Shown: piece after piece, positions 6,929 through 48,404 of the stretch
Layout: every line of letters begins with the position of its first letter
Numbering within the stretch: position 1 is the first letter of the stretch
Assembly: GCA_964187785.1 (NCBI GenBank)
Contig: CAXLNC010000268.1
Span: 1 to 56,506 of the forward strand
Reading direction: 5' to 3'
DNA length: 56,506 bases
DNA from: Amphiscolops sp. MND2022
Lineage: Eukaryota
The notes under the pieces: generated by a model
Seen by the model: only the letters and a program-made list of their open reading frames with translations
Databases searched by the model: none
What the model was told of the DNA's origin: nothing
Program-made: the position numbers and the translations under genes

Positions 6929-9900
6929 AGTCTTTCGAAAGATGCAAGTTTCGTTAAGTTTATCATTCCCCTAAGTTCAAAAATGACACACTATTAATAG
7001 CAAACATAGCACTCCCTTGCATACTTTTCTACTTCTGACATCTCTTTCAATCTATTTCTTTCCAAAAATTATTCTCCTCAATCATATTTCTCTATCTCAC
7101 AAAAACTCGAATTCATCAGTTTCTAAAAATGTCTAAAAATTTCAACACAAGTATCATTTTTCTTACAAATATCGTTTTCCATTTCAGAAACACAATTCGT
7201 TCACTTCGACTTATTCTACCAGTCTTTCAGCTTCTTTCTACCAGTCTGACTGCTTAAAGTTTTCTTAAATTTTGCAAAAAGAAGCACTTACATTTTCCTC
7301 CACAAAATTTGTTGTCAAAATTGCTCCTTGCTCCAATTTGAAAACGACTATAGTGAAAAAAAACTGCATCTTCAAAAAATCAAAATTTTAGTCCATCACA
7401 ACCTTGTTGCTTTTATTCATCGTTATTCCACGCTTTTCTATAAAAACTTCCTCAAAAATTGTCTTCCACCTACTTTTAACCACAAAACGATACAACATTT
7501 TAACAACATTCACTAGATCCTCTGAAATAATATTCACATGAATTCGGTTTCACCAACTTCTCTTTTCAATATCTGTTCTTTCTTTCATCATGCCTTTCCC
7601 CATCATTGTCCACTGCTTGTACCGATTCCAAAACGACTGGTCAACTCATCAACCAGATGTTGGATTCATCCACAACTTGATCCATTTCTCTATCCAACTC
7701 TACTTCCACATAGCTCCTACTTTGCCTTCTGTTTCTTGACAATTACCTTTGAATCTGCCCCGCCGAGTGGAACATCAATCCTCAGGAAATTCTTCCTCTG
7801 CCTCCTTCACTCTTCCTCTCTAGCCTCAAGATGCAGTTGCCACAAACACATTTCCGTAACAATGCCCTCCTATGAAAGAACTGACCCAGCCGTTGCAACT
7901 TCGCAAGCCTCGTCACACGAAACGTCCTCAATTGCACCCAGGTGAAGCTGGTACAGAAACTAAACGAATCGTTCCTTCTGTTAGTTATAAACGAAAACGG
8001 TCCAATTTATAATGATGCCCAAATAAATTATGAAAAGTATTTAGACTCACGGCTTCATTATCAAACCAATGACTTTCATATATATTGCCTCAAAATTGAA
8101 TGAGATTGCGAATACATCACAGCCACTCACTCAAAATCAACGAAAATAAAAACTCCCGCTACAATAATAATAGTGCTTACCATCAATCCTAATACAAATA
8201 CCCCATAATCACTCTATACACACTAATCATTTCCTCAGTTTTCAGCAAACCTGCTCTTTTTCAAAATCAAATCGTTTTCCAACTCAATTGATAACAATTC
8301 CTCTGCCAGCCTATTGTGCCTATTGATACAAAAATTGAGTCTCTTATCGTTCATTATTGTTGAACTACATTGACGTATTCATTTTTCCCTCAATTGCAAT
8401 CATCTTACTAATCTTTTTGCACTACATGTATCTATATAATGCCTCTAATAAAAACAGAATAAAAAATTACACAACAAAATCAGCATAAAGTTTTTTTTAC
8501 CTTCAATATTCACGACTCTACATCACATATGTAACCTTTTACTTTTTCCGTATTAACATCTATAAACTTTTAAATTCGAAATACTGTTACTCCAAGTCAA
8601 CATTGTTTTGTCTGAGATTTTGTCAGCTATAACATGGTACTGCGCAATTTGTCGGACAGCGAGGAGATTGCAAAAGTAGCCACAACGACAGCAGTTGCAG
8701 GATTGACAGCAAATTGGGACTCGCCAGAATCTGCTGCTACTATAGAATGGGAGGAGTGGTGGAACCTGTTTATGATTGCTGTAAACCCAAATATTCAATA
8801 TCTGTGGACGAGTTACTGCCAAAGGTGATCAAAAACAGACCACAAATTGCAGCATTGAATAATAACCGGCACGAGCAGGCAGCAGATACAAAGTTCGTTA
8901 GTCTTCTACTCCTGTCATTTAAAACAGCAGCAAGCAAACAATTGACGGACAAAGTTCTGCAAATGATAATAGCAACAGGTTCACTGAGAGAAATCAGGGA
9001 AAACTGCGAACAAGCTTTCATGAAATCTGGCAATCGAACACTAGAACGTTACAAATTTTTGGCAAGAAAACAGAAGGACAGGGAGACGCTTAGCCAATTT
9101 TGGCACACACTAACGTCCTTTGCAGCAACGTGTGAGTTTGGCGAGCAATTACAGAGCCCTATATTGGATGTGTTCACATCGTAGAAAAGATGAACAACAA
9201 GTCTGTACAAGAACCATTTTGCACAGAACCGAAAGGAGACACGCAAGAAGCTTTTATAATTGCTATAGAATATGAAGAAGGAATACATTAACATCAAACA
9301 CAACCGAGGGACACAGCAAAAGAGGTTTAACAGGAACCAGTGTTCATTTTGAACGAAAAGAGAAATCGAGTCACAAGATGTTGGTTTGAAGTTATAAAGT
9401 TTCATTAAGCTAGTTGCGAGGCCAAAAAGGAACAATGCAGAATCTGCTACAACAATGGACATTTTGCATGAATGTACAGAACCATAAAATATGGCAATTC
9501 AAGAGGAAGAGGACGAAACTACAATCGTGCCAGAATGAGACGCGTTAAGCTAAATGGATGAGACAGCGCCAAATCAGAAACTGGCAGTGACAACGAAGAA
9601 GACATCATGGTACTTCACGTGAACGGAAGTGGTAATCAACTATTCGTAATGAACGGAAAAAAATGTCGTTCCACCCCATGATTGATTCAGGTTCCCCGAT
9701 TACAATCTTCACTCAAGCAGACTTACGAAAAGTTCCAAAAGTGGACGTAACTTTTGCACGACTAATGCCAAAAAAAGAACTACGTCGATTACAAAAAGAA
9801 ACCGTTGAATTTAGTGGGATTCGTCACAGCAGATGAACATGTGGGAGAAACAAAATCAAAAAAGGAGTCAAAGGCATTACACGCGATGGAAGAAGATCAC

Positions 9901-10053
9901 TGATCGGAAGAAACTGCTAGTCGTACTGAACTTTAGAGTAGGCGAAGCAAACAAGTATAATAACGCTGTTAATAAAAGAACTAATCAAAACATTATTATT
10001 GAAAAACTAAAACAAACATTCCCAAAACTATTAACGAGAATGGGAAAAATTAA
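6929..10053 (+). repeat. Copy 1 of a 3.12-kb tandem duplication (upstream/LTR-like region + Gypsy gag-protease)
   Basis: AGTCTTTCGAAAGATGCAAG at 6929 recurs at 10054. ORF pairs are offset by 3118 bp (8553/11671, 8714/11832). The copies differ by scattered substitutions. Confidence 0.95.
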
Positions 10054-10055
10054 AG
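8634..10055 (+). pseudogene. gag: Gypsy/Ty3 gag-protease, degenerate, truncated at the duplication junction
   Basis: WEEWWNLF; NRTLERYKFLARKQKDRETLSQFW..L..AATCEFG (homologous to the gag at 55454); protease MIDSGSP at about 9680. Multiple frameshifts. Confidence 0.85.
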
Positions 10056-13000
10056 TCTTTCGAAAGATGCAAGTTTCGTTAAGTTTATCATTCCCCTAAG
10101 TTCAAAAATGACACACCATTAGTAGCAAACATAGCACTTCCTTGCATACTTTTCTACTTCTGACATCTCTTTCAATCTATTTCTTTCCAAAAATTATTCT
10201 CCTCAATCATATTTCTCTATCTCACAAAAACTCGAGTTCATCAGTTTCTAAAAATGTCTAAAAATTTCAACACAAGTATCATTTTTCTTACAAATATCGT
10301 TTTCCATTTCAGAAACACAATTCGTTAAATTCGACTTATTCTACCAGTCTTTCAACTTCTTTCTACCAGTCTGACTGCTTAAAGTTTTCTTGAATTTTGC
10401 AAAAAGAAGCACTTACATTTTCCCCCACAAAATTTGTTGTCAAAATTGATCCTTGCACCATTTTGAAAACGACTATAGTGAAAAAAAACTGCATCTTGAA
10501 AAAATCAAAAATTTAGTCCATCACAACCTTGTTGCTTTTATTCATCGTTATTCCACGCTTTTCTGTAAAATTTCCTCAAAAATTTTCTTCCACCTACTTT
10601 TAACCACAAAACGATACAACATTTTAACAACATTCACTAGATCCTCTGAAATAATATTCACATGAATTCTGTTTCACCAACTCTTTTCAATATCTGTTCT
10701 TTCTTTCATCATGCCTTTCCCCATCATTGTCCACTGCTTGTACCGATTCCAAAACGACTGGTCAACTCATCAACCAGATGTTGGATTCATCCACAACTTG
10801 ATCCATTTCTCTATCCAACTCTACTTCCACATAGCTCCTACTTTGCCTTCTGTTTCTTGACAATTCCCTTTGAATCTGCCCGCCGAGTGGAACATCAATC
10901 CTCTGGAAATTCTTCCTCTGCCTCCTTCACTCTTCCTCTCTAGCCTCAAGATGCAGTTGCCACAAACACATTTCTGTAACAATGCCCTCCTGTGAAAGAA
11001 CTGACCCAGCCGTTGCAACTTCGCAAGCCTCGTCACACGAAACGTCCTCAATTGCACCCAGGTGAAGCTGGTACAGAAACTAAACGAATCGTTCCTTCTG
11101 TTAGTTATAAACGAAACGGTCCAATTTATAATGATGCCCAAATAAATTATGAAAAGTATTTAGACTCACGGCTTCATTATCAAACCAATGACTTTCATAT
11201 ATATTGCCTCAAAATTGAATGAGATTGCGAATACATCACAGCCACTCACTCAAAATCAACGAAAATAAAAACTCCCGCTACAATAATAATAGTGCTTACC
11301 AATAATCCTAATACAAATACCCCATAATCACTCTATACACAATAATCATTTCCTCAGTTTTCAGCAAACCTGCTCTTTTTCAAAATCAAATCGTTTTCCA
11401 ACTCAATTGATAACAATTCCTCTGCCAGCCTATTGTGCCTATTGATACAAAAATTGAGTCTCTTATCGTTCATTATTGTTGAACTACATTGACGTATTCA
11501 TTTTGCCCTCAAATGCAATCATCTTACTAATTTTTTTGCACTATATGTATCTATATAATGCCTCTATTAAAAACAGAATAAAAAATTACACAACAAAATC
11601 AGCATAAAGTTTTTTTACCTTCAATATTCACGACTCTACATCACATATGTAACCATTCACTTTTTCGGTATTAACATCTATAAAGTTTTAAATTCGAAAT
11701 ACCGTTACTCCGAGTCAACATTGTTTTGTCTGAGATTTTGTCAGCTATAACATGGCACTGCGCGATTTGTCGGACAGCGAGGAGATTGCAAAAGTAGCCA
11801 CAACGACAGCAGTTGCAGGATTGACAGCACATTGGGACTCGCCAGAATCTGCTGCTACAATAGAATGGGAGGAGTGGTGGAACCTGTTTATGATTGCTGT
11901 AAACCCAAATATTCAAAATCTGTGGACGAGTTACTGCCAAAGGTGATCAAAAACAGACCACAAACTGCACCATTGAATAATAACCGGCACGAGCAGGCAG
12001 CAGATACAATGTTCGTTAGTCTTCTACTCCTGTCATTTAAAACAGCAGCAAGCAAACAATTGACGGACAAAGTTCTGCAAATGATAATAGCAACAGGTTC
12101 ACTGAGAGAAATCAAGGAAAAACGCGAACAAGCTTTCATGAAATCTGGCAATCGAACACTAGAACGTTACAAATTTTTGGCAAGAGAACAGAAGGACAGG
12201 GAGACGCTTCGCCAATTTTGGCACACACTAACGTCCTTTGCAGCAACGTGTGAGTTTGGCGAGCAATTACAGAGCCCTATATTGGATGTGTTCACATCGT
12301 AGAAAAGATGAACAACAAGTCTGTACAAGAACCATTTTGCACAGAACCGAAAGGAGACACGCAAGAAGCTTTTATAATTGCTATAGAATATGAAAAAGGA
12401 ATACAACAACACCAAACACAACCGAGGGACACAGCAAAAGAGGTTTAACAGGAACCAGTTTTCATTTTGAACGAAAAGAGGAATCGAGGCACAAGATGTT
12501 GGTTTGAAGTTATAAAGGATCATTAAGCTAGTTGCGCGGCCAAAAAGGAACAATGCAGAATCTGCTACAACAATGGACATTTTGCATGAATGTACAGAAC
12601 CATAAAACATGGCAATTCAAGGGGAAGAGGACGAAAGTACAATCGTGCCAGAATGAGACGCGTTAAGCTAAATGGATGAGACAGCGCCAAATCAGAAACT
12701 GGCAGTGACAACGAAGAAGACATTATGGTACTTCACGTGAACGGAAGTGGTAATCAACTATTCGTAATGAACGAAAAAAAAGCGTCGTTCCACGCCATGA
12801 TTGATTCAGGTTCCCCAATTACAACCTTCACTCAAGCAGATTTACGAAAAGTTCCAAAAGTGGACGTAATTTTTGCACGACTAATGCCAAAAAAAAAGAA
12901 CTACGTCGATTACAAAAAGAAACCGTTGAATTTAGTGGGATTCGTCACAGCAGCTGAACATGTGGGAGAAACAAAATCAAAAAAGTAGGCATAGGCATTA

Positions 13001-13176
13001 CACGCGATGGAAGAAGATCACTGATCGGAAGAAACTGCTAGTCGTACTGAACTTTAGAGTAGGCGAAGCAAACAAGTATAATAACGCTGTTAATAAAAGA
13101 ACTAATCAAAACTTTATTATTGAAAAACTAAAACAAACATTTCCAAAACTATTAACGAGAATGGGAAAAATAAAAG
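10054..13176 (+). repeat. Copy 2 of the 3.12-kb tandem duplication
   Basis: Matches 6929-10053 and runs on into RT coding sequence (KIKGHQIKIEF). Confidence 0.95.
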
Positions 13177-15812: not shown

Positions 15813-16708
15813 TCATGGCAACTTCACGGCAAATTCATTTTCCTCAGTCTTTGTAGATGTGAAGGAATTTCCTCGTCCGGCTAGGCAGTAGAACTCGTTG
15901 TCGTCTAGTTTGATGTCATAAATTTCTTCAATTTCTCTAACAGATGGTTCGTTCAGCTCCTCCGTTTCCGCGGGGGGGAGAGGGGTTTCGTTTTCTTGGT
16001 TGTTTTTATTCAGGGCAGGCGCTAGCTCGGGCATATAGTCCGGTTCTTCATTGTCGGATTCACTCTCCTTTTGTGTTTCTGCAACGAAAGCCTCTTCTTC
16101 ATCAGACTCGAAAGTAGATTCGAGTTCAGCCTCGCTGCCCCTCCACACTTCTATTGATGAATTTAGCATCCCCACCATATTTAAGGGCAGGGTTTTAATA
16201 GGAGTACTGTACCTATCAGGGGTGTTCAATTAAGTTTGCAAAGAAAAATTATTGCAATTGAACAATTACAATTATTTATTTAGCGACTCGGTGTTCCAAC
16301 AATTTTTGATTGCGCGTAATCCTGCGGGGTGATTATTAATTGCAGTGTAGCATTTTAAAGTATTGGTTTTTTTAGTCGAGCGAAATTTATGATGACTGAT
16401 TATAGAAAGGAACTTTCGCCAAGCTATTTTTAGTCTCAAATGTTTTTGATGATAAATGAAGCATTTTGGACTCATTTTGATGTTCAAGAAATTTTGTAAA
16501 TTCAAGTTTCTTCATCAGTTTGTTTGAGTACAATAATTTTTTTATTTTTTTTTAGAAGTGGAAAATTACAATATTGATTTTTGTAGGCTCAGATTTGAAT
16601 ATATTGATTATTTTGAGTCAATATATGACAATACAAAAATGAACACCCCTGGTACCTATGGTTCTCCTCATCCGATGAGATATCGATAACGAGGGCGTAG
16701 TTATCCAT
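15813..16708 (-). CDS. Predicted 150-aa acidic orphan protein (exons 16708-16656 and 16212-15813; intron formed by a MITE)
   Basis: MDNYALVIDISSDEENH + RYSTPIKTLPLNMV... joins in frame once the MITE and one TSD copy are removed. D/E-rich; no recognisable domain. Confidence 0.55.
16217..16651. mobile_element. 435-bp hAT-type MITE, precisely spliceable
   Basis: TIR CAGGGGTGTTCA / TGAACACCCCTG; perfect 8-bp TSD GTACCTAT (16209-16216, 16652-16659). Confidence 0.92.
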
Positions 16709-19045: not shown

Positions 19046-19756
19046 TTTTTGTGCTTTCCCGTATAATTTTTTTTTGGCCAGTTTTTGGTGTACGTCATTG
19101 AGAAACATTTGAAACACTGGGAAAATTTTTTATTAAATCTGAAATGGGAGGTTTTAAATTCATCAAGGGATTCCAAAAATTGACATATACACATGCAGCA
19201 GGTTTCAACGGAACATTATTTTGGCTTCGATTTTTGTGCTTTCCCGTATAATTTTTTTTGGCCAGTTATTGGTGTACGTCATAGAGAAACAACTGAAACA
19301 CTGGGAAAATATTTTATTAAATTTGAAATGGGAGGTTTTAAATTCATCAAGGGATTCCAAAAATTGACATATACACATGCAGGAGGCTTCAACGGAACAT
19401 TATTTTGTCTTCGATTTTGTGCTTTTTTCGTATAATTTTTTTTGGCCAGTTATTGGTGTACGTCATAGAGAAACAACTGAAACACTGGGAAAATATTTTA
19501 TTAAATCTGAAATGGGAGGTTTTAAATTCATCAAGGGATTCCAAAAATTGACATATACACATGCAGGAGGCTTTAACGGAACATTATTTTGTCTTCGATT
19601 TTGTGCTTTTTTCGTATAATTTTTTTTTCGGCCAGTTATTGGTGTACGTCATAGAGAAACAACTGAAACACTGGGAAAATATTTTATTAAATCTGAAATG
19701 GGAGGTTTTAAATTCATCAAGGGATTCAAAAATTGACATATACCCATGCAGGAGGC
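19046..19756 (+). repeat. 184-bp tandem repeat, about 4 units (related copy at about 30280-30510)
   Basis: Repeat-derived ORFs recur at 19193, 19377 and 19561 (period 184). The unit contains GGGAGGTTTTAAATTCATCAAGGGATTCCAAAAATTGACATATACACATGCAG. Confidence 0.92.
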
Positions 19757-20290
19757 GTCTCGGATTTGTCCAAAAAGCGTCAAAGGAATGAAAATCTTCC
19801 AAATGCGGATGAAAATAAAAGTAAAAACGATTGAAAATAAACGTGTCTCGGATTTGTCCAAAACGCGTCACAGGAATTAAAACATTCCAAACGCGGATAA
19901 AAATGAAGGTAAAAACGAATGAAACTCAAGGTGTCTCGGATTTGTCCAAAAAGCATCAAAGAAATAAAAACAATGGAAATGCGTATGAAAATGAAAGTAA
20001 AAACAATGAAATCAACGTGTCTCGGATTTGTCCGAAAAGCGTGACAGGAATGAAAACATTCCAAAAGCGGATGAAATTAAAATTGTTCATTTCTTTGGAA
20101 GGAGAGTTGCTTCTCCGCCCGGCTGGACCGTAGCTGAATTCTCACAAGAAGTGATCACATCTGCAGTCTACCTGTCAGGCTAGAAATAGAGGAGCAGCTG
20201 CTAGAGATCACCCTTCATGCAGAGGTCCAACCGAGACTAATTTATATTGGTAACTGCGAAAGCTGTTACCATGCTAGAACACTGTATGAT
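19757..20290 (+). repeat. About 87-bp tandem array (AACGTGTCTCGGATTTGTCCAAAAAGCGTCACAGG...) followed by a conserved tail of about 210 bp
   Basis: The same array plus tail occurs at 37116-37807; an inverted tail at about 35274-35415. The tail has a GGTAACTGCGAAAGCTGTTACC hairpin followed by CTAG. Confidence 0.8.
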
Positions 20291-21598: not shown

Positions 21599-22388
21599 CT
21601 TGAATCATATTATTCACTAGCTACCATTCACTTCACACTGTCATTATGATGTCTTCCCTCGAATGCGAAGGGTCCCCATGAGTCCGAAATCTAATCTTGC
21701 AAAAAACATTCATGTAAAAAATCAGCGAAGAACCATTTGCTACTTGGTAATCAAAACATTATTCATTGGAATGCCAAAAAATATATTTATTATCGACTTT
21801 CATTTTTTTGTTTTTTGACTTTTTTTAACTAGTTACTTAGTTAATTCAATTCAATTCAATTTTCTGTAAGACTCGCTTTTCCAACGCTGAGTATAGCTAT
21901 ATTTTAATTAAATACCGTGAGAAAGTTGCAAAAGAACTAAAATAGGAACAAAACGTCTCAACATTCTTTCGGATTCGTGGGAATCAAAATTTATGTTCGG
22001 ACTCGTGAATATAAATTATCATTATTATCATTATGAATGTCTATTCTGTGCAAGATTACTTTCGGACAAGTGACCGACTGAGCTTTCATGAGATATTTTC
22101 CGCCATCAAATACAAACAAATGAGTTGTAATAATTGTTACACTTTAGTGTTATTACTTCACAGGAACTTTAGAAAACGTTATTCATTTTTCATCCCTGAT
22201 CCAGATATAATCCTTGTTTATCCGTGAGTACGTATTTGTGACCATGTTTTTTAATCCCCCTTGAGATACAAATCACAGTTTAAAGACCATAATGTAAAAA
22301 TAGATGTCTTTACAATATGGTATTTTAATCGTTTATAACGTTTTTACTCCAGTCATAGCTACGAAGAAAATAGCTATGAAAAAAAACG

Positions 22389-23040
22389 AAAAAAATCAAC
22401 GTGTCTCGGATTTGTCCAAAAAGCGTCACAGGAATGAAAACATTCTAAATGCGGATGAAAATGAAAGAAAAAACAAATAGAGCCAACGTGTCTCGAGACA
22501 CGTTGGCTCTATTTGTTTTTTCTTTCATTTTCATCCGCATTTAGAATGTTTTCATTCCTGTGACGCTTTTTGGACAAATCCGAGACACGTTGATTTTTTT
22601 GACACCGATCGGAATTGACCAAAAAGCGTCACAGGAATGATAACCTTCCAAATGCGTATGGAAATGAAAGAAAAAACGATTGAAAATCAACGGGTCCCGG
22701 ATTTATCCAAAAAGCGTCACAGGAAAGAAAACATTCCAAATGCGGATGAAAATAAAAGTAAAAACGATTGAAAATCAACGTGTCTCTACTTTGTCCAAAA
22801 AGCCTCAAAGGATAAAAAGCATTTCAAATGCGTATGAAAATGAAAGTAAAAACGAATGAAAACTTTCATTGATTAATTTGTTGATTAACCAACGTGTCTC
22901 GGATTGTCCAAAAAGCAACAAAAGGATGAAAATATTCCAGATGCGATTGAAAATGAAAACTATGCCTAAACGAAAATCAGCATGTCTCGGACTTGTCCAG
23001 ACAGCGTCAAAGCGATGAAAACATTCCAAATAAGCATGAA
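22389..23040. repeat. 87-bp satellite array starting with a perfect 212-bp spacerless palindrome (22389-22600)
   Basis: The 106-bp arms are exact reverse complements centred on GTGTCTC|GAGACAC. Plus-oriented degenerate units follow. Confidence 0.9.
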
Positions 23041-23049
23041 AATGATTTA

Positions 23050-23240
23050 CAAGAAAAAGACAATCTTGAAAATAATTTTTCAACCGAGGAAGATATTACC
23101 GTGCCCGGAATATCAGAAAATGATGGAAATGGGGAAATGAAAGAAAATACTAGTTCCAGAGTAGGGAAGTATAATCTTCGACCTAACCCCACCCCAACTA
23201 CACTTTTGAATACAGATATTAGACTCAAAACTGAATTTTC
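23050..23240 (+). pseudogene. Remnant resembling the C-terminal end of a Gypsy pol
   Basis: ...SSRVGKYNLRPNPTP, resembling the RY-LR-type tail often seen at the end of Gypsy integrase. Isolated fragment. Confidence 0.35.
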
Positions 23241-30730: not shown

Positions 30731-31542
30731 AGGAATTCTAATATTCAAAAGTTGTGTAAGGAAGCCTATTTTCAACAAAATTCAAGTAAGAGTAATAGGA
30801 TTTATAATACAAAGTGTCAAAAAAACTTGTTTTGAGTTTTAGGAAAACTTATCATGCGGGGGGAAACTTTCTGAGGCATTTGTATGCGGATTATACACAC
30901 ATCTGTAATATACATATAAGGAATTCTGGAAACTATCAAAACTAAGGAAACTTGATGCAAATATAATGCATTAACAAGTGGAAAATGTATCAGTAATACT
31001 TATACTTCAATGCATATTGGCTCATAAGGAAAAACTCAGACACGTACATTTACGCGCACTCTGAAAGTTGTATCTTGTAATGTTGTGAAAATTTGCAATT
31101 GAGATATAAAATTTGTTCACACTATTTTTCCTTATGAAGTAACTCGTTTTTGACAGCTTCTTTTTTTGAGTCACAGATCAATTTTGTAGTTAAAATGTCG
31201 AAGTTCGGATTCAACAGACCAGTTGAACGATTTTTTTTTCATTTTGTGTTTTAAAACTTCACATTTGCAGCTAATGTTAGCACTATTTTCTTTATTGTTA
31301 CTAATTATGAAGTGAATTGAAGAACTTGTACATCCAATTCATTCCAACTGGCCCATGGTTTTTTTCAAAAAAGCAATACGCCCCGGAATTTTGACGCGAG
31401 AAGCATGCGATAAATGTGTAGGGTATCACGTTTTCTGTACCTTTCTGATACATTCCCCGTATGTCACTTGAGCGTAATTTGGTTTTAATAAGGGGCATCT
31501 CATCGAAGCTTCTTCTTTTTCAGATCTTGATTTGATTTCCAG

Positions 31543-34089
31543 ATGAAGAAAGCTGCGAGTCAACCTTCAACTCAAAGTCGGAGTTCCCGGTGAGCCGAAT
31601 GAAATTTTCGGAGACTGTTTAGATTGTGCATATATATGCTAATCGTTCAGGCAAAAAGAAAATCCGTTAAGTTTTTTGAATTGTTGGTCACACGCAAAAA
31701 ACCTTCGCTCAGTGACGAGACTTTGATTCTTCAACTTTTTTTATTCTAGCAGGAGATAAAACGGGATTTTTCTGGTACTCGATATCCGATAAATCATTTT
31801 ATACAAACATTTCAACAAATAGTATGTTTCAGACTGGCTGAGTTACGAAGACTGGAGAGCGAGAACTTCGCTCTTCCTAGTGATTATACATTCCTCTTCT
31901 ATTTCGAGCGCGAGAAGAAATTTATGTCCATTAATTGTCAATCTGGCTTCTGGAAAAAGGATTTCACCACTGCCAAAAAATTGCTCTGGAGAAAGGCACT
32001 TATGTTGCTTTCAACAGCATTGGTACTGGCCAATTTCTTTGCAAGGGACCAGTTTTTCTTCTGGAGGCTGTTGCAAAGCATGTTGACGACAAAGTAGATG
32101 CTGGCTTTGACCTCGAAACGCTAGATATTACCATTGCCATGGAGGAAGCAAAAGACCAGCTAGAAAATCGAGAAGAAGAAGAAGAAGAAGAAGAAGGGGA
32201 AGAAGCAGAAGAAGTTGAAAATGAAGATATCAACACAACTTTCCTCCAAGTTAATAACGCGCCCATTGAAAGGAATACTTCCCAGGAGATTTTCGACAAC
32301 GATAATCCCCCAGTTGAGCCACATTTGGAGACACCCACAGCCTCAACCTCCAAAACGTGCCCAACTTGTAACCAATATCTGGATCATAAAAAACAGGTCT
32401 TTGGTTTTTGTTTCATTTGATTGCCGAAAAAAAAACAAAACAGTAATTTTGTTTTTCTTAAATTACTAAGGTCTTACTGTATACATTCATTATTTTGCTC
32501 ATGTATATTTTTCAAAGAAGATGGATGCTGCTTTATTCGTGTATTTTTAAAACATTTTTATTTGATCCTGACATGAAAACAAGTTCTTCAACGATATTTA
32601 TAACTAAAAATTAGTCTAAAAACGTAAATTCAAAAAGCAATAAATCGTCTCATTTTGAAGGGCGACAATTCGTCCCAATTTGAAAAGGTGACAATTTGTC
32701 CCATTTGTATAAGGCAACAATTTGTCCCAATTTGTTCAGTTGATCGGCAAATTTGAAGATTGAAATTGAAGAATTGAACAAAAAAACTACAATTGATTGC
32801 ATTTAAACAAAAATTTACATTACATTCAGGACCTATTGATTGGTGTTACTTGTTGGTACCTGCCTCCAAATGGAATAGATCTGGTTACTTTATTGCAAAG
32901 GTATTGATTGGCAATTAAACTGGGAACGAAGTGACGTTTTTATTGTAGGGGACGATTTCAAGCTTATTGTGAGGTTAATCGTATCAACAGTTCAATTTTG
33001 CTCAGATAATATCCGTTGATGTTATTTAAAATTACAATCGTTGTTTTACATTTGAGGCTTTATTTTTTCCTCAACCTAAGTGATTATGTTTAGAGAGAGG
33101 CGTGGGACAGGTTTACTCACTTGCTAACACGGCTAGAAAGTCGTTTGGATAGGGCGGCGGACATTAAGGAGGAGTCTCTAAAGTTTGCCCGAAAAGCTTT
33201 GAAAGAATTCAACTCTCTTTCAGCCATGTCAAGTCAAAGTTCGTTGAACGACGCTACTGGAAGCCAAACCTCTAATCCTTCAGGCAGGGGTGTTCAATAT
33301 TTTTTTTTCAAATTTTATTATTGCCTAAAACCTAATATATTTTCAGGGAGGACAAAATAAAAACTTTATTATTTTTATTGCTAAAATAATCATTTGTATA
33401 CTCAGCGAAAAACGGATATCAACAAAAACTTAAACCGGCCATCCATAATCAACCAAAACGCGTTGACAGGGCTTTTTTCTTGGACCCTAGGTATTTGACA
33501 AAGGTATTTCCAGAAACTAGCTCAAATTTTCAGTATTTTTGAATTTCATTGGCTGACGAAATGTTGAATCGAACGATCTTATTTTTAGTTATCTCAAGAA
33601 AAATTACTTTTATACTGAAAGGTCCAAAAACAATTTTGATTCATTAGAGCTCTAATTATTAAGTTCTAATATTACGCTAGCGTAAAAATAATTTTTTATT
33701 TTTTTTATTTATTATAATTATTTCTACCCAAAATTGTTTTTTGAACACGCCTGCCTTCAGGAGAAGAAGTGATGTTCAATGGTTTAAATCTTACCAATTT
33801 GAGGGGCGATACTCCTGCTCAGAAGACCAAAAACATTGCTTTGGCCTTGTTCACGACTGACGAGCTGGGAAAAGTGGTTATTGACCCCAGAAAATCGCTG
33901 AATAATTGTTCTCAGCGAGTGCCAGCCGACGAATATCGGACGGAATTGTACAGGAAAGCTGTACGCGTAGCTTTAGGTCAGCATTTTACGACCGACCTGT
34001 ACAGAAATACACTACGTCTTGTGAACCAGATGGGAGTGGACAAAAGTGCCAAGCCGAAACAAAACAAACTCGAAACGAATTATTCTTGA
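31543..34089 (+). CDS. Gene A: about 376-aa protein with poly-Glu tract, coiled-coil-like segment and C-terminal BEN domain (one homopolymer frameshift)
   Basis: Exons 31543-31589, 31833-32396, 33094-33283, 33761-34089 with consistent phases. A 1-bp shortfall in the A6 run at 31975-31980. BEN-like pattern KNIALALFTTDELGKVVIDP...PADEYRTELYRKAV...LVNQMG. Confidence 0.65.
33285..33753. mobile_element. 469-bp hAT-type MITE in a gene A exon, precisely spliceable (GC-AG)
   Basis: TIR CAGGGGTGTTCAA / TTGAACACGCCTG; perfect 8-bp TSD CCTTCAGG (33277-33284, 33754-33761). Confidence 0.92.
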
Positions 34090-34387: not shown

Positions 34388-35200
34388 ATGTTTGCGGATG
34401 CTGAAACGGTTAACAACCTGATGACCAGAATTGAAAAACTGGAGGAGACCTTGGTTCAATGCGATACCATTGAGATAGAATATAGGAACACCATGCTCAA
34501 AATCTACCAGCATTTCAGGTTGCAGGTTAGCAACAATCTTCAAAATCAATCTTGTCTTTGGAAAAAGAATTTCTGAACTTTTGATTCAAAAAACGCAACT
34601 AGAGAAATTTCAATTGCTCTAGAGTTAGTCTCAAACTATTGAAAGAGTTTAAACTAGAACAATTGTTACTAGAATGAAGATCGCGCGAAAGCATCACAGC
34701 TGAAAGACGTTACCGAAGAACTGTGGTACAATTCAAACAATTTGTTGGAGTATCAAGGTGACAGAACGGACTATCGGAAAGTCGGGAGAGTTCTCGTCAA
34801 AAAAATTTACTCAAAAGAAGAAAGACAGCAGTACAGCTTTTCTCCGAGGAAGCGAGCACCAATGGAAAGATTCCAGCAAGAACCCGCAACTGCTGAAAGT
34901 CTTGAAGCATTCAAAGGTGAGCTACAACTTTTCCCGTTGTGTTTAATTTCTGTCTCCGACTTAACAGTATATACTGTATAGTATATACTTTAGAGTTAGT
35001 AAAAACTCATGTTCCAATATTTTCTATTTTCTCTAGGGTTGATTTTATCATTGCTCTAACTTCGAAGTTAGACCGATGATAAAATCACCCGTGCAGAAGA
35101 TAGAAAATTTTGGAAATTGAACTTTGTGTCTCTAATATCCCGAGAAAAAAAGGAATTTGAATGAAGATGGGAAAACGAAAAAGAGCCGATGTTTAAAGCG
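34388..35200 (+). CDS. Gene B: coiled-coil + BEN-like domain protein (last exon unresolved)
   Basis: TTCAG|AT ATG at 34388. Exons 34388-34525 and 34673-34916 are in phase. RKVGRVLVKKIYSKEERQQYSFS...EPATAESLEAFK fits the BEN pattern. The next exon, from 35037, stops early. Confidence 0.5.
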
Positions 35201-36065: not shown

Positions 36066-37807
36066 TCATTTTTTTTCGTTTTTAGTTTTTATTTCATCCG
36101 CATTTGGAATGTTTTCATTTCTGTGACGCTTTTTGGACAAATCCGGGACCCGTTGATTTTCAATTGTTTTTACTTTAACTTTCATCGGCATTTGGAATGT
36201 TTTCATTCCTATGACGCTTATTGGACAAATCCGGGACCCGTTGATTTTCAATCGTTTTCACTTTTATTTTCATCCTGATTTGGAATGTTTTCATTCCTGT
36301 GACGCTTTTTGGACATATAAAAATAAAGGTAAAAACGAATCGAAATCAACGTGTCTCGGATTTGTCCGAAAACCCTGGTCGAGAAAAATGCGTTCCTTGC
36401 AAGGATCTTGCAAGCTCCTTGTAAAAATGCAATTACTTGTAAGATCTTGCAAGGAAATTTGTTCCTTGCAAGATCTTGCAAGGAAATGTTTTCCTTGAAA
36501 GATCTTGCAAGGAAATGTTTTCTTGAAAGATCTTGCAAGGAAATGCTTTCCTTGCAAGATTCTTGAGTTCAATGTACTTCATACTGAGAAATTATGTTAA
36601 CGTAGTTGTGATTTGAGAATAATGTCAAAAACGTTAATAACTATTATTTCAGAAGGGTAATTTAACAAATTGAAAAATAATTTCAATCGAAATATTATGC
36701 ACAGTCTAATTTCAAATCAATAACTGGTAAATAACACAAACTGTATTTTAAATGTTGCGTCACTGAAATGTACTACTATTTTTCAAATAACTTCACTATC
36801 ACACTTTTAGAGATAGTTTCTACAGTTTGCATCTTTTTGGTGGTTGAATCCTCTAGTTAGTAAACCCCGTTCTGTGACAGAATCTAATAGTCACGATGCA
36901 GTAGTCAACTTGAAGTCAAAAACAATGAATATAAAAAATAAAAAAAATTGTCGGGAACCTTCCACGAAGTTTTTCTCCTTGGAAGAATATTGCGAGGAAT
37001 TTTTTTTCTTGCAAGATTCTTGCAAGATGTCTTGCAGAAAAATGCATTATCTTGTAAGACCTTGAAAGAAAATCTTGCAAGATCCTTGCAAGGAACGCAT
37101 TTTTTTCTACCAGGGAAGCGTCACAGGATTAAAAACATTCCAAATGCGGATAAAAATAAAAGTAAAAACGAATGAAAATCAACATGCCTCGGATTTGTTC
37201 AAAAAGCGTCAAAGGAATGAAATTATTCCAAATGCGGATGAAAAGGAAATTAGAAACGAATAAAGTCAACGTGTCTCGGATTTGTCCGAAAAGCGTCACA
37301 GAAATAAAAACATTCCAAATGCGGATAAAAATAAAGGTAAAAACGAATGGGAATCAACGTGTCTCGGATTTGTCCAAAAAGCATCAATGAAATGAAACCA
37401 ATCGAAATGCGTATGAAAATGAAAGTAAGAACTAATGAAAATCAAAGTGTCTCGGATTTGTCCAAAAAGCGTCAAAGGAATGAGAACAATCCAAATGCGG
37501 ATGCAAATAAAAGTAAAAACGAAAAAAAAAATCAACGTGTCTCGGATTTGTACGAAAAGCGTGACAGGAATGAAATTATTCCAAATGCGGATGAAATTAA
37601 AATTCGTTTCTTTGGAAGGAGGGTTTTTTCTCCGCTCGGCTGGACCGTACCTGAATTCTCACAAAAAGTGATCACATCAGCAGTCTGCCTGCCAGGCTAG
37701 AAATAGAGGAGCAGCTGTTGTAGATCACCCTTCATGCAGCGGTCCAACCGAGACTAATTTATATTGGTAACTGCGAAAGCTGTTACCATGCTAGAACACT
37801 GTATGAT
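36066..37807. repeat. Back-to-back 87-bp satellite arrays (minus then plus orientation) with conserved tail, split by a CACTA-type MITE
   Basis: Minus-oriented units 36066-36313; orientation switches at about 36315; plus units to about 37600; tail to 37807. Confidence 0.85.
36373..37115. mobile_element. 743-bp CACTA-type MITE
   Basis: TIRs CCCTGGTCGAGAAAAATGCGTTCCTTGCAAGGATCTTGCAAG / reverse complement ending CTACCAGGG. AA TSD: the host unit CCGAAAAGCGTC is restored on removal. Subterminal CTTGCAAG repeats. Confidence 0.9.
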
Positions 37808-45629: not shown

Positions 45630-46155
45630 CAAATTTCTGAAATTTTGGACAACGTGTACACTACGTGAGCGACCTCAATTAGGCGAAGCCGAGACAAGAA
45701 ACGAGACAACTACTACTCGCATCCAATACTGACGTCACTGACGAGTCCGCGCGACAGAAGGCAATTACAGCGTAATGTAATGTAATGTATATACTGGTGA
45801 CGTCGATTATAATAGCGACGTCACAGAGCAACTTGAAGAAACAAATTATTCCACGTGTCTCTGTTTTGTCCAAAAAGCGTCAAAGAAATGAAAACATTCC
45901 AAATGCGGATGAAAAAAACAGTAAAAACGATTGAAAATCAACGTGTCTCGGATTTGTCCACAAAGCGTCACAGGAGTGAAAACATTCCAAATGTTTTTTT
46001 TTCGTTTGATTTTTTTCGTTTTTTGGCACTATGCGACTTTTTTTTCGAAAATTTTTGGGTTCTATCAAAAAGTAACCCCTTGCATTTTTTTGTTGAAGTT
46101 TTCGGTTTGTAAAAACGTTTAATGGGCCTGAATGGCCTCTTTTTGAGTTTTTCGA

Positions 46156-46572
46156 GGCTCTTTTCTGTTTCCCCCCCCCCCCACCACCAAGTTTTTTTTT
46201 GAAAACTAGTGAAAATCTAATAACAAATAGACTTGGATACAAACAAGAAAGCTTCAGTTTTAAATTTATTCTAAGGGTGATAGTTTAGGATTCAGATACA
46301 AACTTTATTCACACTTTTTCCCTATGTAGTTACGCATTTTCGATGAAGAAATCAACAGCTTCTTGTTTTGAGTCATCAATAAACACTTGATACGAACATA
46401 ATCATAGTGAAAATGTGTGAACAATGTTTTGTTCAAGCGGAAAACTACTCTAATAAAAGTTAACTTCCTGTTATGAAAGAAGGTTTTACTTTTAACAAGG
46501 TTAGCCTAATGTTTTTAAGGAAAGCTATTTTCAAAAAATTTGGTGGTGGGGGGGGGAAAACAGGAAAGAGCC
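46156..46572. mobile_element. Inverted copy of the GGCTC MITE family (no TSD); partial copies at about 38220-38590 and 44810-45070
   Basis: Same TIRs; the interior is the reverse complement of 45219-45629. Confidence 0.8.
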
Positions 46573-46574
46573 AA

Positions 46575-47275
46575 AAGTAAAAACGATTGAAAATCAACGT
46601 ATCTCGGATTTGTCCAAAAAGCGTCACTGGAATGAAAACATTCCGAATGCGGTTGAAAAAAAAGTAAAAACGATTGAAAATCAACGTGTCTCGGATTTGT
46701 CCACAAAGCGTCACAGGAGTGAAAACATTCCGAATGCGAATGAAAAAAAAGTAAAAACGATTGAAAATCAACGTGTCTCGGATTTGTCCACTAAGCGTCA
46801 CAGGAATGAAAACATTCCAAATGCGGATGAAAAAAAAGTAGAAACGATTGAAAATCAACGTGTCTCGGATTTGTCCAAAAAGCGTCACAGGAATGAAAAC
46901 ATTCCAAATGCGGAAGAAAATAAAAGTGAAAACTAATGAAAATCAACGTGTCTCGGATTTGTCTGAAACGCGTCACAGGAATGAAAACATTCCAAATGCG
47001 GATGAAAATAAAAGTAGAAACTAATGAAATCAACGCGTCTCGGCTTTGACCAAAAAGCGTCACAGGAGTGAAAACATTCCGAATGCGAATGAAAAAAAAG
47101 TAAAAACGATTGAAAATCAACGTGTCTCGGATTTGTCCAAAAAGCGTCACAGGAATGAAAACATTCCAAATGCGGATGAAAAAAAAGTAAAAACGATTGA
47201 AAATCAACGTGTCTCGGATTTGTCCAAAAAGCGTCACAGGAATGAAAAAACATTCCAAATGCGGAAGAAAATAAA
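46575..47275 (+). repeat. 87-bp satellite array, about 8 units (short array also at 45855-45990)
   Basis: A 29-codon unit SKKRHRNENIPNADEKKVKTIENQRVSDL repeats in ORF 46610-46936. Confidence 0.92.
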
Positions 47276-48404
47276 ACTCAAAACCAGAGAAATTTCTCTG
47301 ATTTTTACTTTCATTTAGAATTTTAATAGTAATTTTATTTACTTTTTCATTAACGAATTCTTACTTTTCTTCATTGACAATTGTTACTTTTTTCCGATAT
47401 TCCAAGCACGGTAATAACTCCTTCGATGAGAGAATTATTTGCATCCCTTGAACACGAACAATAGTCAATTTCCGTTTCTTCAAAGAGTACAACTACTAGG
47501 AAGAATTCAAATAATAAATTGTTAACTCAGGACTCATGCAGTAATTACAGGCATAACAAACATATGTAAGATGTGAGGACAGAAAAACAAATGTAAATAT
47601 AAATGGTAGCAATTTTATAAATACAATTTTTGATAGCAAGTTTGTGTTTTCGGTTCTTTGTTTATGTTCAAGTCGAGCCAATCGGGTGAAGAAACTCAAA
47701 GAGACCCTAACTGAGCCAAACACATTATACATTGAAGGTAAGTGCAGAAGTTAACCGAAAACACCCGAGATGCATTCATGCCTTTCAAAATGTTGACAAA
47801 TCCACTGAGTCTTTTTTAGGATTGTTGAAGACATGTCTGCAGGCGAATTTCAGTCGAGGCAACTCAGCTTGAACAACTAAAACAAGTAAAACAATACCAA
47901 CTAGAATGAACCTCAAAACGGCTGCAAAATGAATAACGTAAAAGTTATTGACACTGCAGTTGAACGTGTTTTTTGCGTTACTCATTTTGCAGCCGTTGTT
48001 AGGTTCATGATTACATTCAACTAATTTTTTGTTCAGTCGCGCTGTCCAGAATTCCTTTCAGCCAATCATGTTTTGCATCATGTTATCACCATACTACAAA
48101 GTGTCATCTTAAGTTTGCTATTCCAGAACTACAGCACCGCAGATACGTCTCGACTCGAGGTCAATTTAAGCTGACATAGAGACAACAAGGAACATGGAAC
48201 TAAGTAAGTTCACTTTTGCTCCTTTTCGGTAGCCTTCGATTGTTTCGTAGTTCATTCCTGAAGCGAATTCCAGCAGAAGTAACAATATTCTCAAAATTGG
48301 GAATAACATCTAAAAAATGGGAATAATGTCTAAATATTGAGACGTTACTGCTGAAAATTGAATGATATTTAGACGTCTAGATTTGGATCTTTTCTGTCAA
48401 TCCC

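What the first reader, a model, noticed from the sequence alone, without database searches (positions are those of the whole stretch)
33277..33761. Introner-like insertion 2: same TIR family forms a perfect GC-AG intron in the BEN gene
Seen: TSD CCTTCAGG. The donor CAG|GC uses the last TSD G (33284) plus the first TIR C; the acceptor is GCCTGCCTTCAG|G (33760). Removing 477 bp restores NPSGEEVMFNG in frame with the BEN exon. The TIR (CAGGGGTGTTCA) is the same as in the 16217 element, though the interiors differ. Known: introners often use GC donors built from TIR and TSD. Inference: both copies of this TIR type seen in the window are exonic and exactly spliceable, which suggests an active intron-gain family, here parasitising another transposon's genes.
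Basis: partly seen in the sequence, partly recalled or inferred. Interest (0 to 1): 0.75.

Follow-up and report, generated by a model that had tools for sequence, protein, structure and literature searches.

The report
Transposon insert as probable intron
A small hAT-type jumping element sits inside the coding sequence of a DNA-binding (BEN-like) gene carried by a giant transposon of a probable acoel worm. It is placed so that it can be cut out exactly as a GC-AG intron and has been copied with its host element into at least 14 other places, but no RNA data exist to prove that it is spliced.

Summary
A 469-bp hAT-type MITE lies at 33285-33753, with 13-bp inverted ends (one mismatch) and an 8-bp duplication CCTTCAGG. 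It interrupts a coding exon, and 33284-33760 (477 nt, 3x159) is an exact GC-AG intron.

New here:
- Sister transposon families have an unbroken ORF across the site (P0002: ...KGEEVMFNG...), so the insert is derived.
- All 14 other copies fetched (L002-L015, several lineages) carry the same insert with the same duplication. It is therefore old and is multiplied by its host, a giant transposon, not by its own jumping.
- The same holds for the 16217 element in a second gene. It gives a GT-AG intron on the minus strand.
- An exactly restoring geometry has a chance of only 3.6-5.4% per insertion, and both insertions have it.
- A 1.9-kb hAT element with the same ends inserted very recently in copy L003.

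No RNA run exists, and the selection tests were inconclusive. I put about 0.6 on real splicing.

'Active intron-gain family' is not supported for these two copies. The BEN identity is supported only by fold, not by Pfam.

The scan has already noted hAT-made introns elsewhere in this genome (CSN2 and others). I file this as a new member of a known kind (introner-like, TSD-assisted intron gain).

The parts
33277..33284 (+). Upstream copy of the 8-bp target-site duplication CCTTCAGG. Its last G (33284) would be the first base of the intron.
   Evidence: identical in all 15 copies
33285..33753 (+). 469-bp non-autonomous hAT-type element (MITE). Its ends are CAGGGGTGTTCAA / TTGAACACGCCTG, 12 of 13 complementary.
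   Evidence: Its first ~46-100 nt are 77-81% like the end of a 1.9-kb hAT element in L003. The ends pair in the predicted RNA fold.
33754..33761 (+). Downstream copy of the duplication CCTTCAGG. It supplies the pyrimidine-rich ...CCTTCAG acceptor (AG at 33759-33760).
33284..33760 (+). Putative GC-AG intron, 477 nt, phase 1. It restores ...NPSG|EEVMFNG... exactly.
   Evidence: Sequence, translation of the joined exons in 15 copies, continuous ORFs in MITE-less paralogues. Not verified by RNA.
33290..33760 (+). Alternative in-frame GT-AG intron, 471 nt (3x157). It uses the GT inside the TIR (GGG|GTGTTC) and would add two residues (Gly-Arg).
   Evidence: read from the sequence; inference only
33094..33283 (+). 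Upstream part of the split exon (predicted helix plus linker). It is preceded by a GT-AG intron at 32397-33093.
   Evidence: acceptor tttag|AGAGAGG; phase 0 on both sides
33761..34089 (+). Downstream part of the split exon. It holds the whole BEN-like domain and the stop codon. Most other copies stop two codons earlier.
31935..32396 (+). Preceding exon of the same gene (acidic region), with donor CAG|GTCTTT at 32396|32397.
16209..16659 (-). Second element with the same TIR (16217-16651) plus its duplications GTACCTAT. On the minus strand it gives ATAG|GTACC...CTGATAG|GTAC, an exact GT-AG intron 16 codons into a second gene (ATG at 16708).
   Evidence: Shared by the B lineage (L016). MITE-less paralogues P0032, P0033 and P0035 are continuous there.
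34975..34982 (+). Empty target site TGTATAGT. In copy L003 it holds a 1,923-bp hAT element with the same TIR and a 502-codon ORF.

Best explanation
A non-autonomous hAT element inserted once into a coding exon of a BEN-like accessory gene of a giant (CMC/CACTA-type) transposon, at the N-terminal edge of the BEN-like domain. The duplicated target CCTTCAGG happened to end in AGG. The upstream copy's CAG|G plus the first base (C) of the element make a CAG|GC donor. The downstream copy makes a pyrimidine-rich ...CCTGCCTTCAG|G acceptor. The element plus one duplication copy is therefore removed from the transcript as a 477-nt GC-AG intron, or as a 471-nt GT-AG intron from the GT six bases further in, and the protein is preserved. 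Because the insertion did no harm, it stayed in the master element and has been copied passively with every later transposition of the giant element. The 16217 element in a second gene has the same history. Shown: the anatomy, the derived state, the sharing of the insertion by all copies, and the recent activity of the hAT family. Inferred: the splicing itself.
For: (1) Exact TIR/TSD anatomy and splice geometry. (2) MITE-less sister genes in the same assembly read through the site without interruption: P0002 = L001:6001-6531, P0017, P0018, P0019, P0022. (3) All 14 further loci (L002-L015) have the same insertion, the same TSD and the same TIR mismatch. They include a burst of copies no more than 1% apart and older lineages 5-9% apart over the exons and the MITE. 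Contigs that cross the junction have the same depth as the flanks. The host family therefore kept amplifying with the insert in place. (4) The joined ORF is open in 13 of 15 copies. (5) The second MITE with this TIR, in another gene of the same element, is also family-wide and also exactly spliceable. The chance of such geometry is 3.6-5.4% per insertion, so about 0.002 for both. (6) Changes private to single copies are neutral in the exons (38 nonsynonymous: 8 synonymous). Changes shared between copies are 10:16 (Fisher p=2e-4). (7) TSD-assisted intron gain with a gc or gt donor from the element and ag from the TSD is documented for introners (PMC11282704, PMC12130899). (8) Earlier notes of this scan report the same construction in host genes of this genome, unverified here.
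Against: No RNA data exist: 4 runs of one sample, none on record as RNA. The spliced junction was not found in metagenome contigs. GC donors are a small minority of animal donors (general knowledge), and CAG|GCAGGG is not the near-perfect consensus that GC introns usually have. The selection signal rests mostly on 12 third-position changes in 33108-33234. In the B lineage these belong to a mosaic block (about 32320-33275) that may have been imported from a relative of unknown MITE status. Without them the shared changes are 10:4, not significant. Within lineage A the shared variation per kb is similar in exon 3 (21.5), the MITE (23.7) and the true intron (30.3). The host gene belongs to a transposon and could be dispensable or supplied in trans. 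The downstream exon alone encodes the whole BEN-like domain behind an ancestral ATG.
Confidence: 0.6

Rival explanations
1. Tolerated gene disruption. The MITE simply broke a BEN-like accessory gene that the giant transposon does not need, or gets in trans from related elements. The spliceable geometry is coincidence, and the insert is not removed, or only inefficiently.
For: The selection tests are inconclusive once the mosaic exon-5 block is set aside. The A-B divergence of the flanks is only 2-3%, so open reading frames could persist by chance. The upstream exon shows 10 nonsynonymous: 7 synonymous changes between lineages. There is no RNA. Sister families with intact genes exist in the same genome.
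Against: Two independent exonic insertions in two genes both have exact geometry, about 0.002 by chance. The BEN-like core is strongly conserved across sister families, with 33 invariant columns in 9 sequences. This argues that the gene matters to these elements.
Confidence: 0.25
2. Split gene. The insertion divided the gene into two separately used products. One is an N-terminal protein that ends 26 codons into the MITE. The other is a stand-alone BEN-like domain translated from the ancestral ATG at 33772, perhaps from a transcript that starts in the MITE.
For: The insertion lies exactly at the boundary between a low-confidence linker and the confidently folded domain (pLDDT about 90 for residues 50-146 of P0002). 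The Met of EEVMFNG is conserved in the paralogues. The gene caller finds 94-115-codon ORFs from that ATG or near it in all copies.
Against: It needs a new promoter, for which there is no evidence. It does not explain why the second MITE, 16 codons into another gene, is also exactly spliceable.
Confidence: 0.07
3. Specialised introner family. Elements with the CAGGGGTGTTCA end are an active family that makes introns genome-wide and prefers or creates splice-competent sites.
For: The same TIR occurs on two spliceable exonic inserts. The hAT family is recently active. Other hAT-made introns are noted in this genome (unverified). Parts of the MITE interior are high-copy.
Against: Both inserts are old and are propagated by the host element. 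Only the TIRs are shared. The MITE's terminal ~100 nt have a depth like the flanks, so there is no sign of many full copies elsewhere. The only recent insertion seen has a non-spliceable TSD.
Confidence: 0.12

Closest known systems
Introners / introner elements (Micromonas IE, Aureococcus, dinoflagellates; Gozashti et al. 2022 and 2025, PMC9860276, PMC12130899; review PMC11282704)
   Same: It is a DNA-transposon-derived insert with TIRs and a TSD. One splice site, or part of one, comes from the element (gc or gt). The AG comes from the duplicated target, so element plus one TSD copy equals the intron.
   Different: No many-copy family of near-identical introns is shown. This is one old insertion, multiplied only because its host gene sits in an amplifying giant transposon. 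The element is of hAT type with an 8-bp TSD, in an animal (probable acoel). Splicing is unproven.
MITE-derived non-canonical introns of the tunicate Fritillaria borealis (Henriet et al. 2019, as cited in PMC11282704)
   Same: An animal lineage in which MITE insertions with TIR and TSD became introns, often with non-GT donors.
   Different: Those introns are mostly AG-AC or AG-AT and need an altered spliceosome. Here the ends are GC-AG, which the ordinary U2 spliceosome accepts.
Single transposon insertions spliced out of plant genes (Ds/Ac and dSpm in maize alleles; from general knowledge, not checked here)
   Same: Cut-and-paste elements in exons, hAT elements among them, are removed from the transcript by use of splice sites in or next to the element ends.
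   Different: Those are usually imprecise and leaky in mutant alleles. Here the geometry restores the ORF exactly, and the insert is fixed in a whole element family.
Other hAT-made introns noted by this scan in the same genome (CSN2 GC-AG, Kv3, NFXL1, cyclin; s1-191865, s1-151654, s1-151677, s1-151801)
   Same: The same construction: hAT-type ends and an 8-bp TSD that supplies AG and the donor G.
   Different: Those are in host genes, while this one and its 16217 partner are in genes of another transposon and exist in many copies. I did not re-examine those loci.

Membership tests
hAT superfamily, non-autonomous element (MITE) | 8-bp target-site duplication | tested here: met
   CCTTCAGG on both sides. 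GTACCTAT for the 16217 element. TGTATAGT for the L003 element, with empty sites in the window and 7 other copies.
hAT superfamily, non-autonomous element (MITE) | Short terminal inverted repeats that begin CAG... (hAT-like YARNG) | tested here: met
   CAGGGGTGTTCAA, 12 of 13 complementary
hAT superfamily, non-autonomous element (MITE) | A related autonomous element that encodes a hAT transposase | tested here: inconclusive
   L003:4212-6134 has the same TIR and 77-81% identity to the MITE over the first 46-100 nt. Its 502-codon ORF hits Dimer_Tnp_hAT at E 0.001 (19.3 bits, below the 21.4 cut-off) and zf-BED at E 0.31. There is no PDB sequence match.
Introner (intron-generating transposon family) | Transposon hallmarks (TIR, TSD) exactly at the intron boundaries, with splice sites carried by the element or co-opted from the TSD | tested here: met
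   geometry computed
Introner (intron-generating transposon family) | Removed from transcripts by the spliceosome | not testable with these tools
   No RNA run holds the locus. Only contigs of runs of unrecorded type, from one sample, could be laid.
Introner (intron-generating transposon family) | Many similar copies forming introns at unrelated positions in many genes | tested here: not met
   All 15 copies are the same insertion event. The 16217 element shares only its TIRs. The MITE termini have flank-like depth. A whole-genome census could not be run.
U2-type GC-AG intron | GC at +1/+2, AG at the 3' end, otherwise good donor context and a polypyrimidine tract | tested here: inconclusive
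   The donor CAG|GCAGGG matches at -3 to -1, +1, +3 and +5. The acceptor is CGCCTGCCTTCAG|G. No organism-specific splice model or RNA was available.
BEN domain (Pfam PF10523) | Significant match to the BEN profile | tested here: not met
   No Pfam hit at E<=1 for the exon products or for the intact paralogue P0002. A profile of 9 relatives finds no PDB chain.
BEN domain (Pfam PF10523) | BEN fold | tested here: inconclusive
   In the AlphaFold model of P0002, residues 50-146 have pLDDT about 90. The Foldseek top 9 PDB matches are all BEN domains (BANP, Bsg25A, BEND6), with target TM-scores of 0.53-0.64, probability 0.72-1.0, but E 0.1-0.8.

The most novel reading that the evidence does not exclude
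In this acoel, hAT MITEs whose ends begin with C-A-G routinely become introns whenever the 8-bp target ends in AGG or contains AGGT. Such new introns also arise inside the genes of giant transposons. Those transposons then spread them, so one transposon's amplification multiplies introns made by another. This would be an animal introner system with a second, hitch-hiking mode of intron multiplication.
Probability: 0.3. Interest if true: 0.65.

Novelty: new member of a known kind. Interest (0 to 1): 0.45.

Why it matters
Recent transposon-made introns are well documented in algae, dinoflagellates and fungi but are rare in animals. A full-text search found no paper that deals with introners in acoels; the one paper holding both words is a Copia survey.

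This locus offers a clean natural test:
- The ancestral uninterrupted state is preserved in sister families.
- The insert is present in many copies of known relative age.
- A second insert built the same way lies 17 kb away in another gene.

If RNA shows splicing, two things follow. A plain hAT insertion would be enough to create a working GC-AG intron in an animal. A host transposon could then multiply that intron.

If RNA shows no splicing, the locus shows that a giant transposon can lose two accessory genes and still amplify.

Tried and rejected
- **RNA evidence:** The look-up of sequencing runs gave only 4 runs of one sample, none on record as RNA. Read laying on their contigs showed no clean 477-nt joint. 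One low-depth contig leaves the window at 33283 and resumes at 33935. It also carries other rearrangements, so it is a diverged relative and neither a spliced nor a clean empty form.
- **Spliced junction in metagenome contigs:** an exact search for the 24-mer found 0 hits. The second scan was not spent.
- **BEN by sequence:** Pfam on the exon products and on P0002, phmmer against PDB, and a profile of 9 relatives against PDB all found nothing.
- **dN/dS between lineages:** window versus L009 gives w = 0.14. I do not rest on it, because the synonymous changes cluster in a probably recombinant block.
- **The MITE as a neutral yardstick:** rejected as decisive. Both MITEs are 8-9% diverged between lineages A and B, while coding and non-coding flanks are mostly 2-3% (exon 5 excepted). 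Within lineage A, exon 3, the MITE and the true intron carry similar shared variation.
- **Invariance of the intron ends:** the first 14 and last 24 nt are invariant in all copies. I do not count this as evidence, because dead copies also lack private changes there, and splicing selection does not predict that.
- **Upstream partitions:** the singleton counts for 31477-32396 are inflated by misalignment of L011 and were ignored.

Full report
**1. The observation**

- CCTTCAGG stands at 33277-33284 and again at 33754-33761.
- Between them lies a 469-bp AT-rich element. Its ends are CAGGGGTGTTCAA and TTGAACACGCCTG, 12 of 13 complementary.
- The 12-mer, with up to one mismatch, occurs four times in the window against 0.18 expected. 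These are the two ends of this element and of the element at 16217-16651.
- An 8-bp duplication and CAG-initial short inverted ends are the marks of a hAT-type non-autonomous element.
- The frame-1 ORF from 33121 runs into the element and stops at 33358-33360. A second frame-1 ORF resumes at 33769.
- Taking 33284-33760 (477 nt = 3x159) as an intron gives CAG|GC...CAG|G and joins ...SNPSG to EEVMFNG....
- The exon begins at 33094, behind an ordinary GT-AG intron at 32397-33093. The previous exon ends at CAG|GTCTTT, 32396|32397.
- A second in-frame option exists: the GT at 33290-33291 inside the TIR with the same acceptor. That intron is 471 nt and adds two residues.
- In the predicted RNA fold the two TIRs pair, which puts both splice sites at the base of one stem.

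**2. Is the insert derived? Yes.**

A protein search with the downstream ORF found a 176-residue relative, P0002, 64% identical.
- Its gene, L001:6001-6531, lies next to a SET-domain ORF, as in the window.
- It reads ...REKGEEVMFNG... without interruption.
- Four more uninterrupted paralogues (P0017, P0018, P0019, P0022) come from the same ENA assembly, ERZ25074608.
- No uninterrupted close relative was found. All 15 members of the 90% cluster are 94-115 residues long. Most start at or near the ATG just behind the insert, and the two longest start in the insert's 3' end.

**3. How old is it, and how does it multiply?**

I fetched 14 further loci on 14 contigs, L002-L015.
- Every one has the same element at the same site, with the same duplication and the same TIR mismatch.
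- The lineages are:
  - a burst no more than 1% apart (window, L003-L008, L012);
  - L015;
  - L002, about 5% away;
  - L011, about 7% away;
  - lineage B (L009, L010, L013, L014).
- Some loci may be allelic contigs, but at least five lineages are distinct.
- In the read-derived contigs, pieces that cross either junction have the same depth as the flanks.
- The outer ~100 nt of the element are not high-copy. Only short inner stretches are, roughly 33393-33434 and 33584-33610.

This is therefore one old insertion into the master copy of the host element. The insert is multiplied by the host, not by its own jumping.

**4. The partner element at 16217**

On the minus strand it sits 16 codons into a second gene (ATG at 16708). 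Its duplication gives ATAG|GTACC...CTGATAG|GTAC, an exact GT-AG intron.
- MITE-less paralogues (P0032, P0033, P0035) read straight through the site, for example ...SSDEENHRYSTPIK... in P0035.
- Lineage B has the same insertion (L016). An older lineage keeps only its last bases (L017).
- The two elements share nothing beyond 13-14 nt at each end.

**5. Is the hAT family alive?**

Copy L003 carries a 1,923-bp element with perfect CAGGGGTGTTCA ends and duplication TGTATAGT.
- The window (34975-34982) and seven other copies have the empty site.
- Its 502-codon ORF gives a weak hAT dimerisation-domain hit, E 0.001 and below the Pfam cut-off.
- Its first ~100 nt resemble the start of the 33285 MITE.
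- The family was therefore active after the latest burst of the host element.
- That new insertion is not spliceable by exact restoration.

**6. Is the insert spliced?**

It cannot be shown. No RNA run exists, and the junction 24-mer is absent from metagenome contigs. The indirect evidence follows.

(a) Geometry. For a random 8-bp duplication next to CA...TG ends, an exactly restoring GT/GC-AG arrangement on a given strand has probability 0.036-0.054. Both exonic inserts of this TIR type have it, about 0.002 jointly. This is expected if only spliceable exonic inserts survive in genes that matter.

(b) Persistence. The host family kept amplifying, and the joined ORF is open in 13 of 15 copies. 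With flank divergence of only 2-3% between lineages, this test has little power.

(c) Substitution pattern.
- Changes private to one copy are neutral: 38 nonsynonymous to 8 synonymous.
- Changes shared by copies are 10 to 16 (Fisher p = 2e-4).
- Twelve of the sixteen synonymous changes are third-position differences at 33108-33234 that are specific to lineage B.
- In lineage B they lie in a mosaic block, about 32320-33275. Its intron part is unalignable, and its last marker sits 10 bp from the MITE.
- That block may have come from a relative of unknown MITE status. Without it the contrast vanishes (10:4).
- Within lineage A, shared variation per kb is similar in exon 3 (21.5), the MITE (23.7) and the true intron (30.3).

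I therefore treat the selection evidence as inconclusive. I rest mainly on (a), on the known mechanism, and on the scan's earlier, unverified notes of the same construction in host genes such as CSN2. My estimate that the insert is removed as an intron is about 0.6.

**7. What is the gene?**

- Pfam finds no BEN domain in the exon products or in P0002. Sequence and profile searches of the PDB are blank.
- An AlphaFold model of P0002, built on 9 relatives, folds residues 50-146 with pLDDT about 90. A long helix and a disordered linker come before that domain.
- The nine best Foldseek matches in the PDB are all BEN domains (BANP, Bsg25A, BEND6). Their target TM-scores are 0.53-0.64, but E is only 0.1-0.8.
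- 'BEN-like' is reasonable but unproven.
- The MITE sits exactly at the N-terminal edge of this domain. This keeps alive the rival that the downstream ORF is used on its own.

**8. Comparison with known systems**

The construction matches introners. There the element brings gc or gt and the duplicated target brings ag (PMC11282704, PMC12130899).
- The defining many-copy intron family is not shown here, and splicing is untested. I therefore do not file the element as an introner, only as working like one.
- It is a further example of TSD-assisted intron gain by a hAT MITE. The scan has already flagged such introns on other DNA of this genome.
- What is particular here is that two such inserts lie in genes of another transposon and are spread by it.

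**9. Limits**

- The genome itself could not be scanned for a census.

Noticed in passing
L003:4212-6134; empty site at window 34975-34982: A 1,923-bp hAT element with perfect CAGGGGTGTTCA ends, TSD TGTATAGT and a 502-codon ORF (weak Dimer_Tnp_hAT and zf-BED hits). It is present in one young copy of the giant element and absent from the window and seven other copies. It is probably the autonomous partner of the MITEs and was active very recently.
   Followed up: partly
window 32320-33275 compared with L009, L010, L013, L014: Lineage B is a mosaic. The true intron 32397-33093 is unalignable. Exon 5 carries 12 differences, all at third codon positions. The block ends within 10 bp of the MITE's left edge. 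The neighbouring stretches differ by only 0.3-3%. This looks like a recombination or conversion tract from a distant relative that stops at the insert.
   Followed up: partly
window 33285-33753 and 16217-16651 against their flanks: Both MITEs differ by 8-9% between lineages A and B. The adjoining coding and non-coding host-element sequence mostly differs by 2-3% (exon 5 excepted). Against one old dead copy (L002) MITE and flanks differ about equally; against another (L011) the MITE differs about twice as much. This is unexplained. Possible causes are constraint on all flanks, conversion of the flanks, or exchange with other MITE copies.
   Followed up: partly
window 32572-32705; also 33393-33434 and 33584-33610: Short stretches have 10-50 times the contig depth of their surroundings. 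One lies in the true intron and two lie inside the MITE. Other genomic copies join 33434 directly to about 33584. These are fragments of high-copy repeats.
   Followed up: no
L017:1940-1975: An older lineage of the second gene keeps only the last ~10 nt of the 16217-type MITE (..CCCCCTGATAG|GTAC) next to exon 2. Unrelated sequence lies upstream and exon 1 is missing. The insert was later rearranged there.
   Followed up: no
window 6929-10055 and 10054-13176: A tandem duplication of about 3.12 kb at 97-100% identity (repeat families D8-D15).
   Followed up: no
window 19670-20110, 22380-23080, 36070-37630, 45820-47340: Arrays of an 87-88-bp tandem repeat in both orientations, several of them arranged as large inverted repeats. 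One is a perfect 106-nt palindrome at 22389-22600.
   Followed up: no
window 34081-34089: The window copy (with L002) reads Tyr where the other copies have the stop TAA (34081-34083), so the protein is two residues longer. P0011 in the ENA assembly matches the window's ORF from its first ATG (33772) exactly, so that assembly probably holds this same locus.
   Followed up: no
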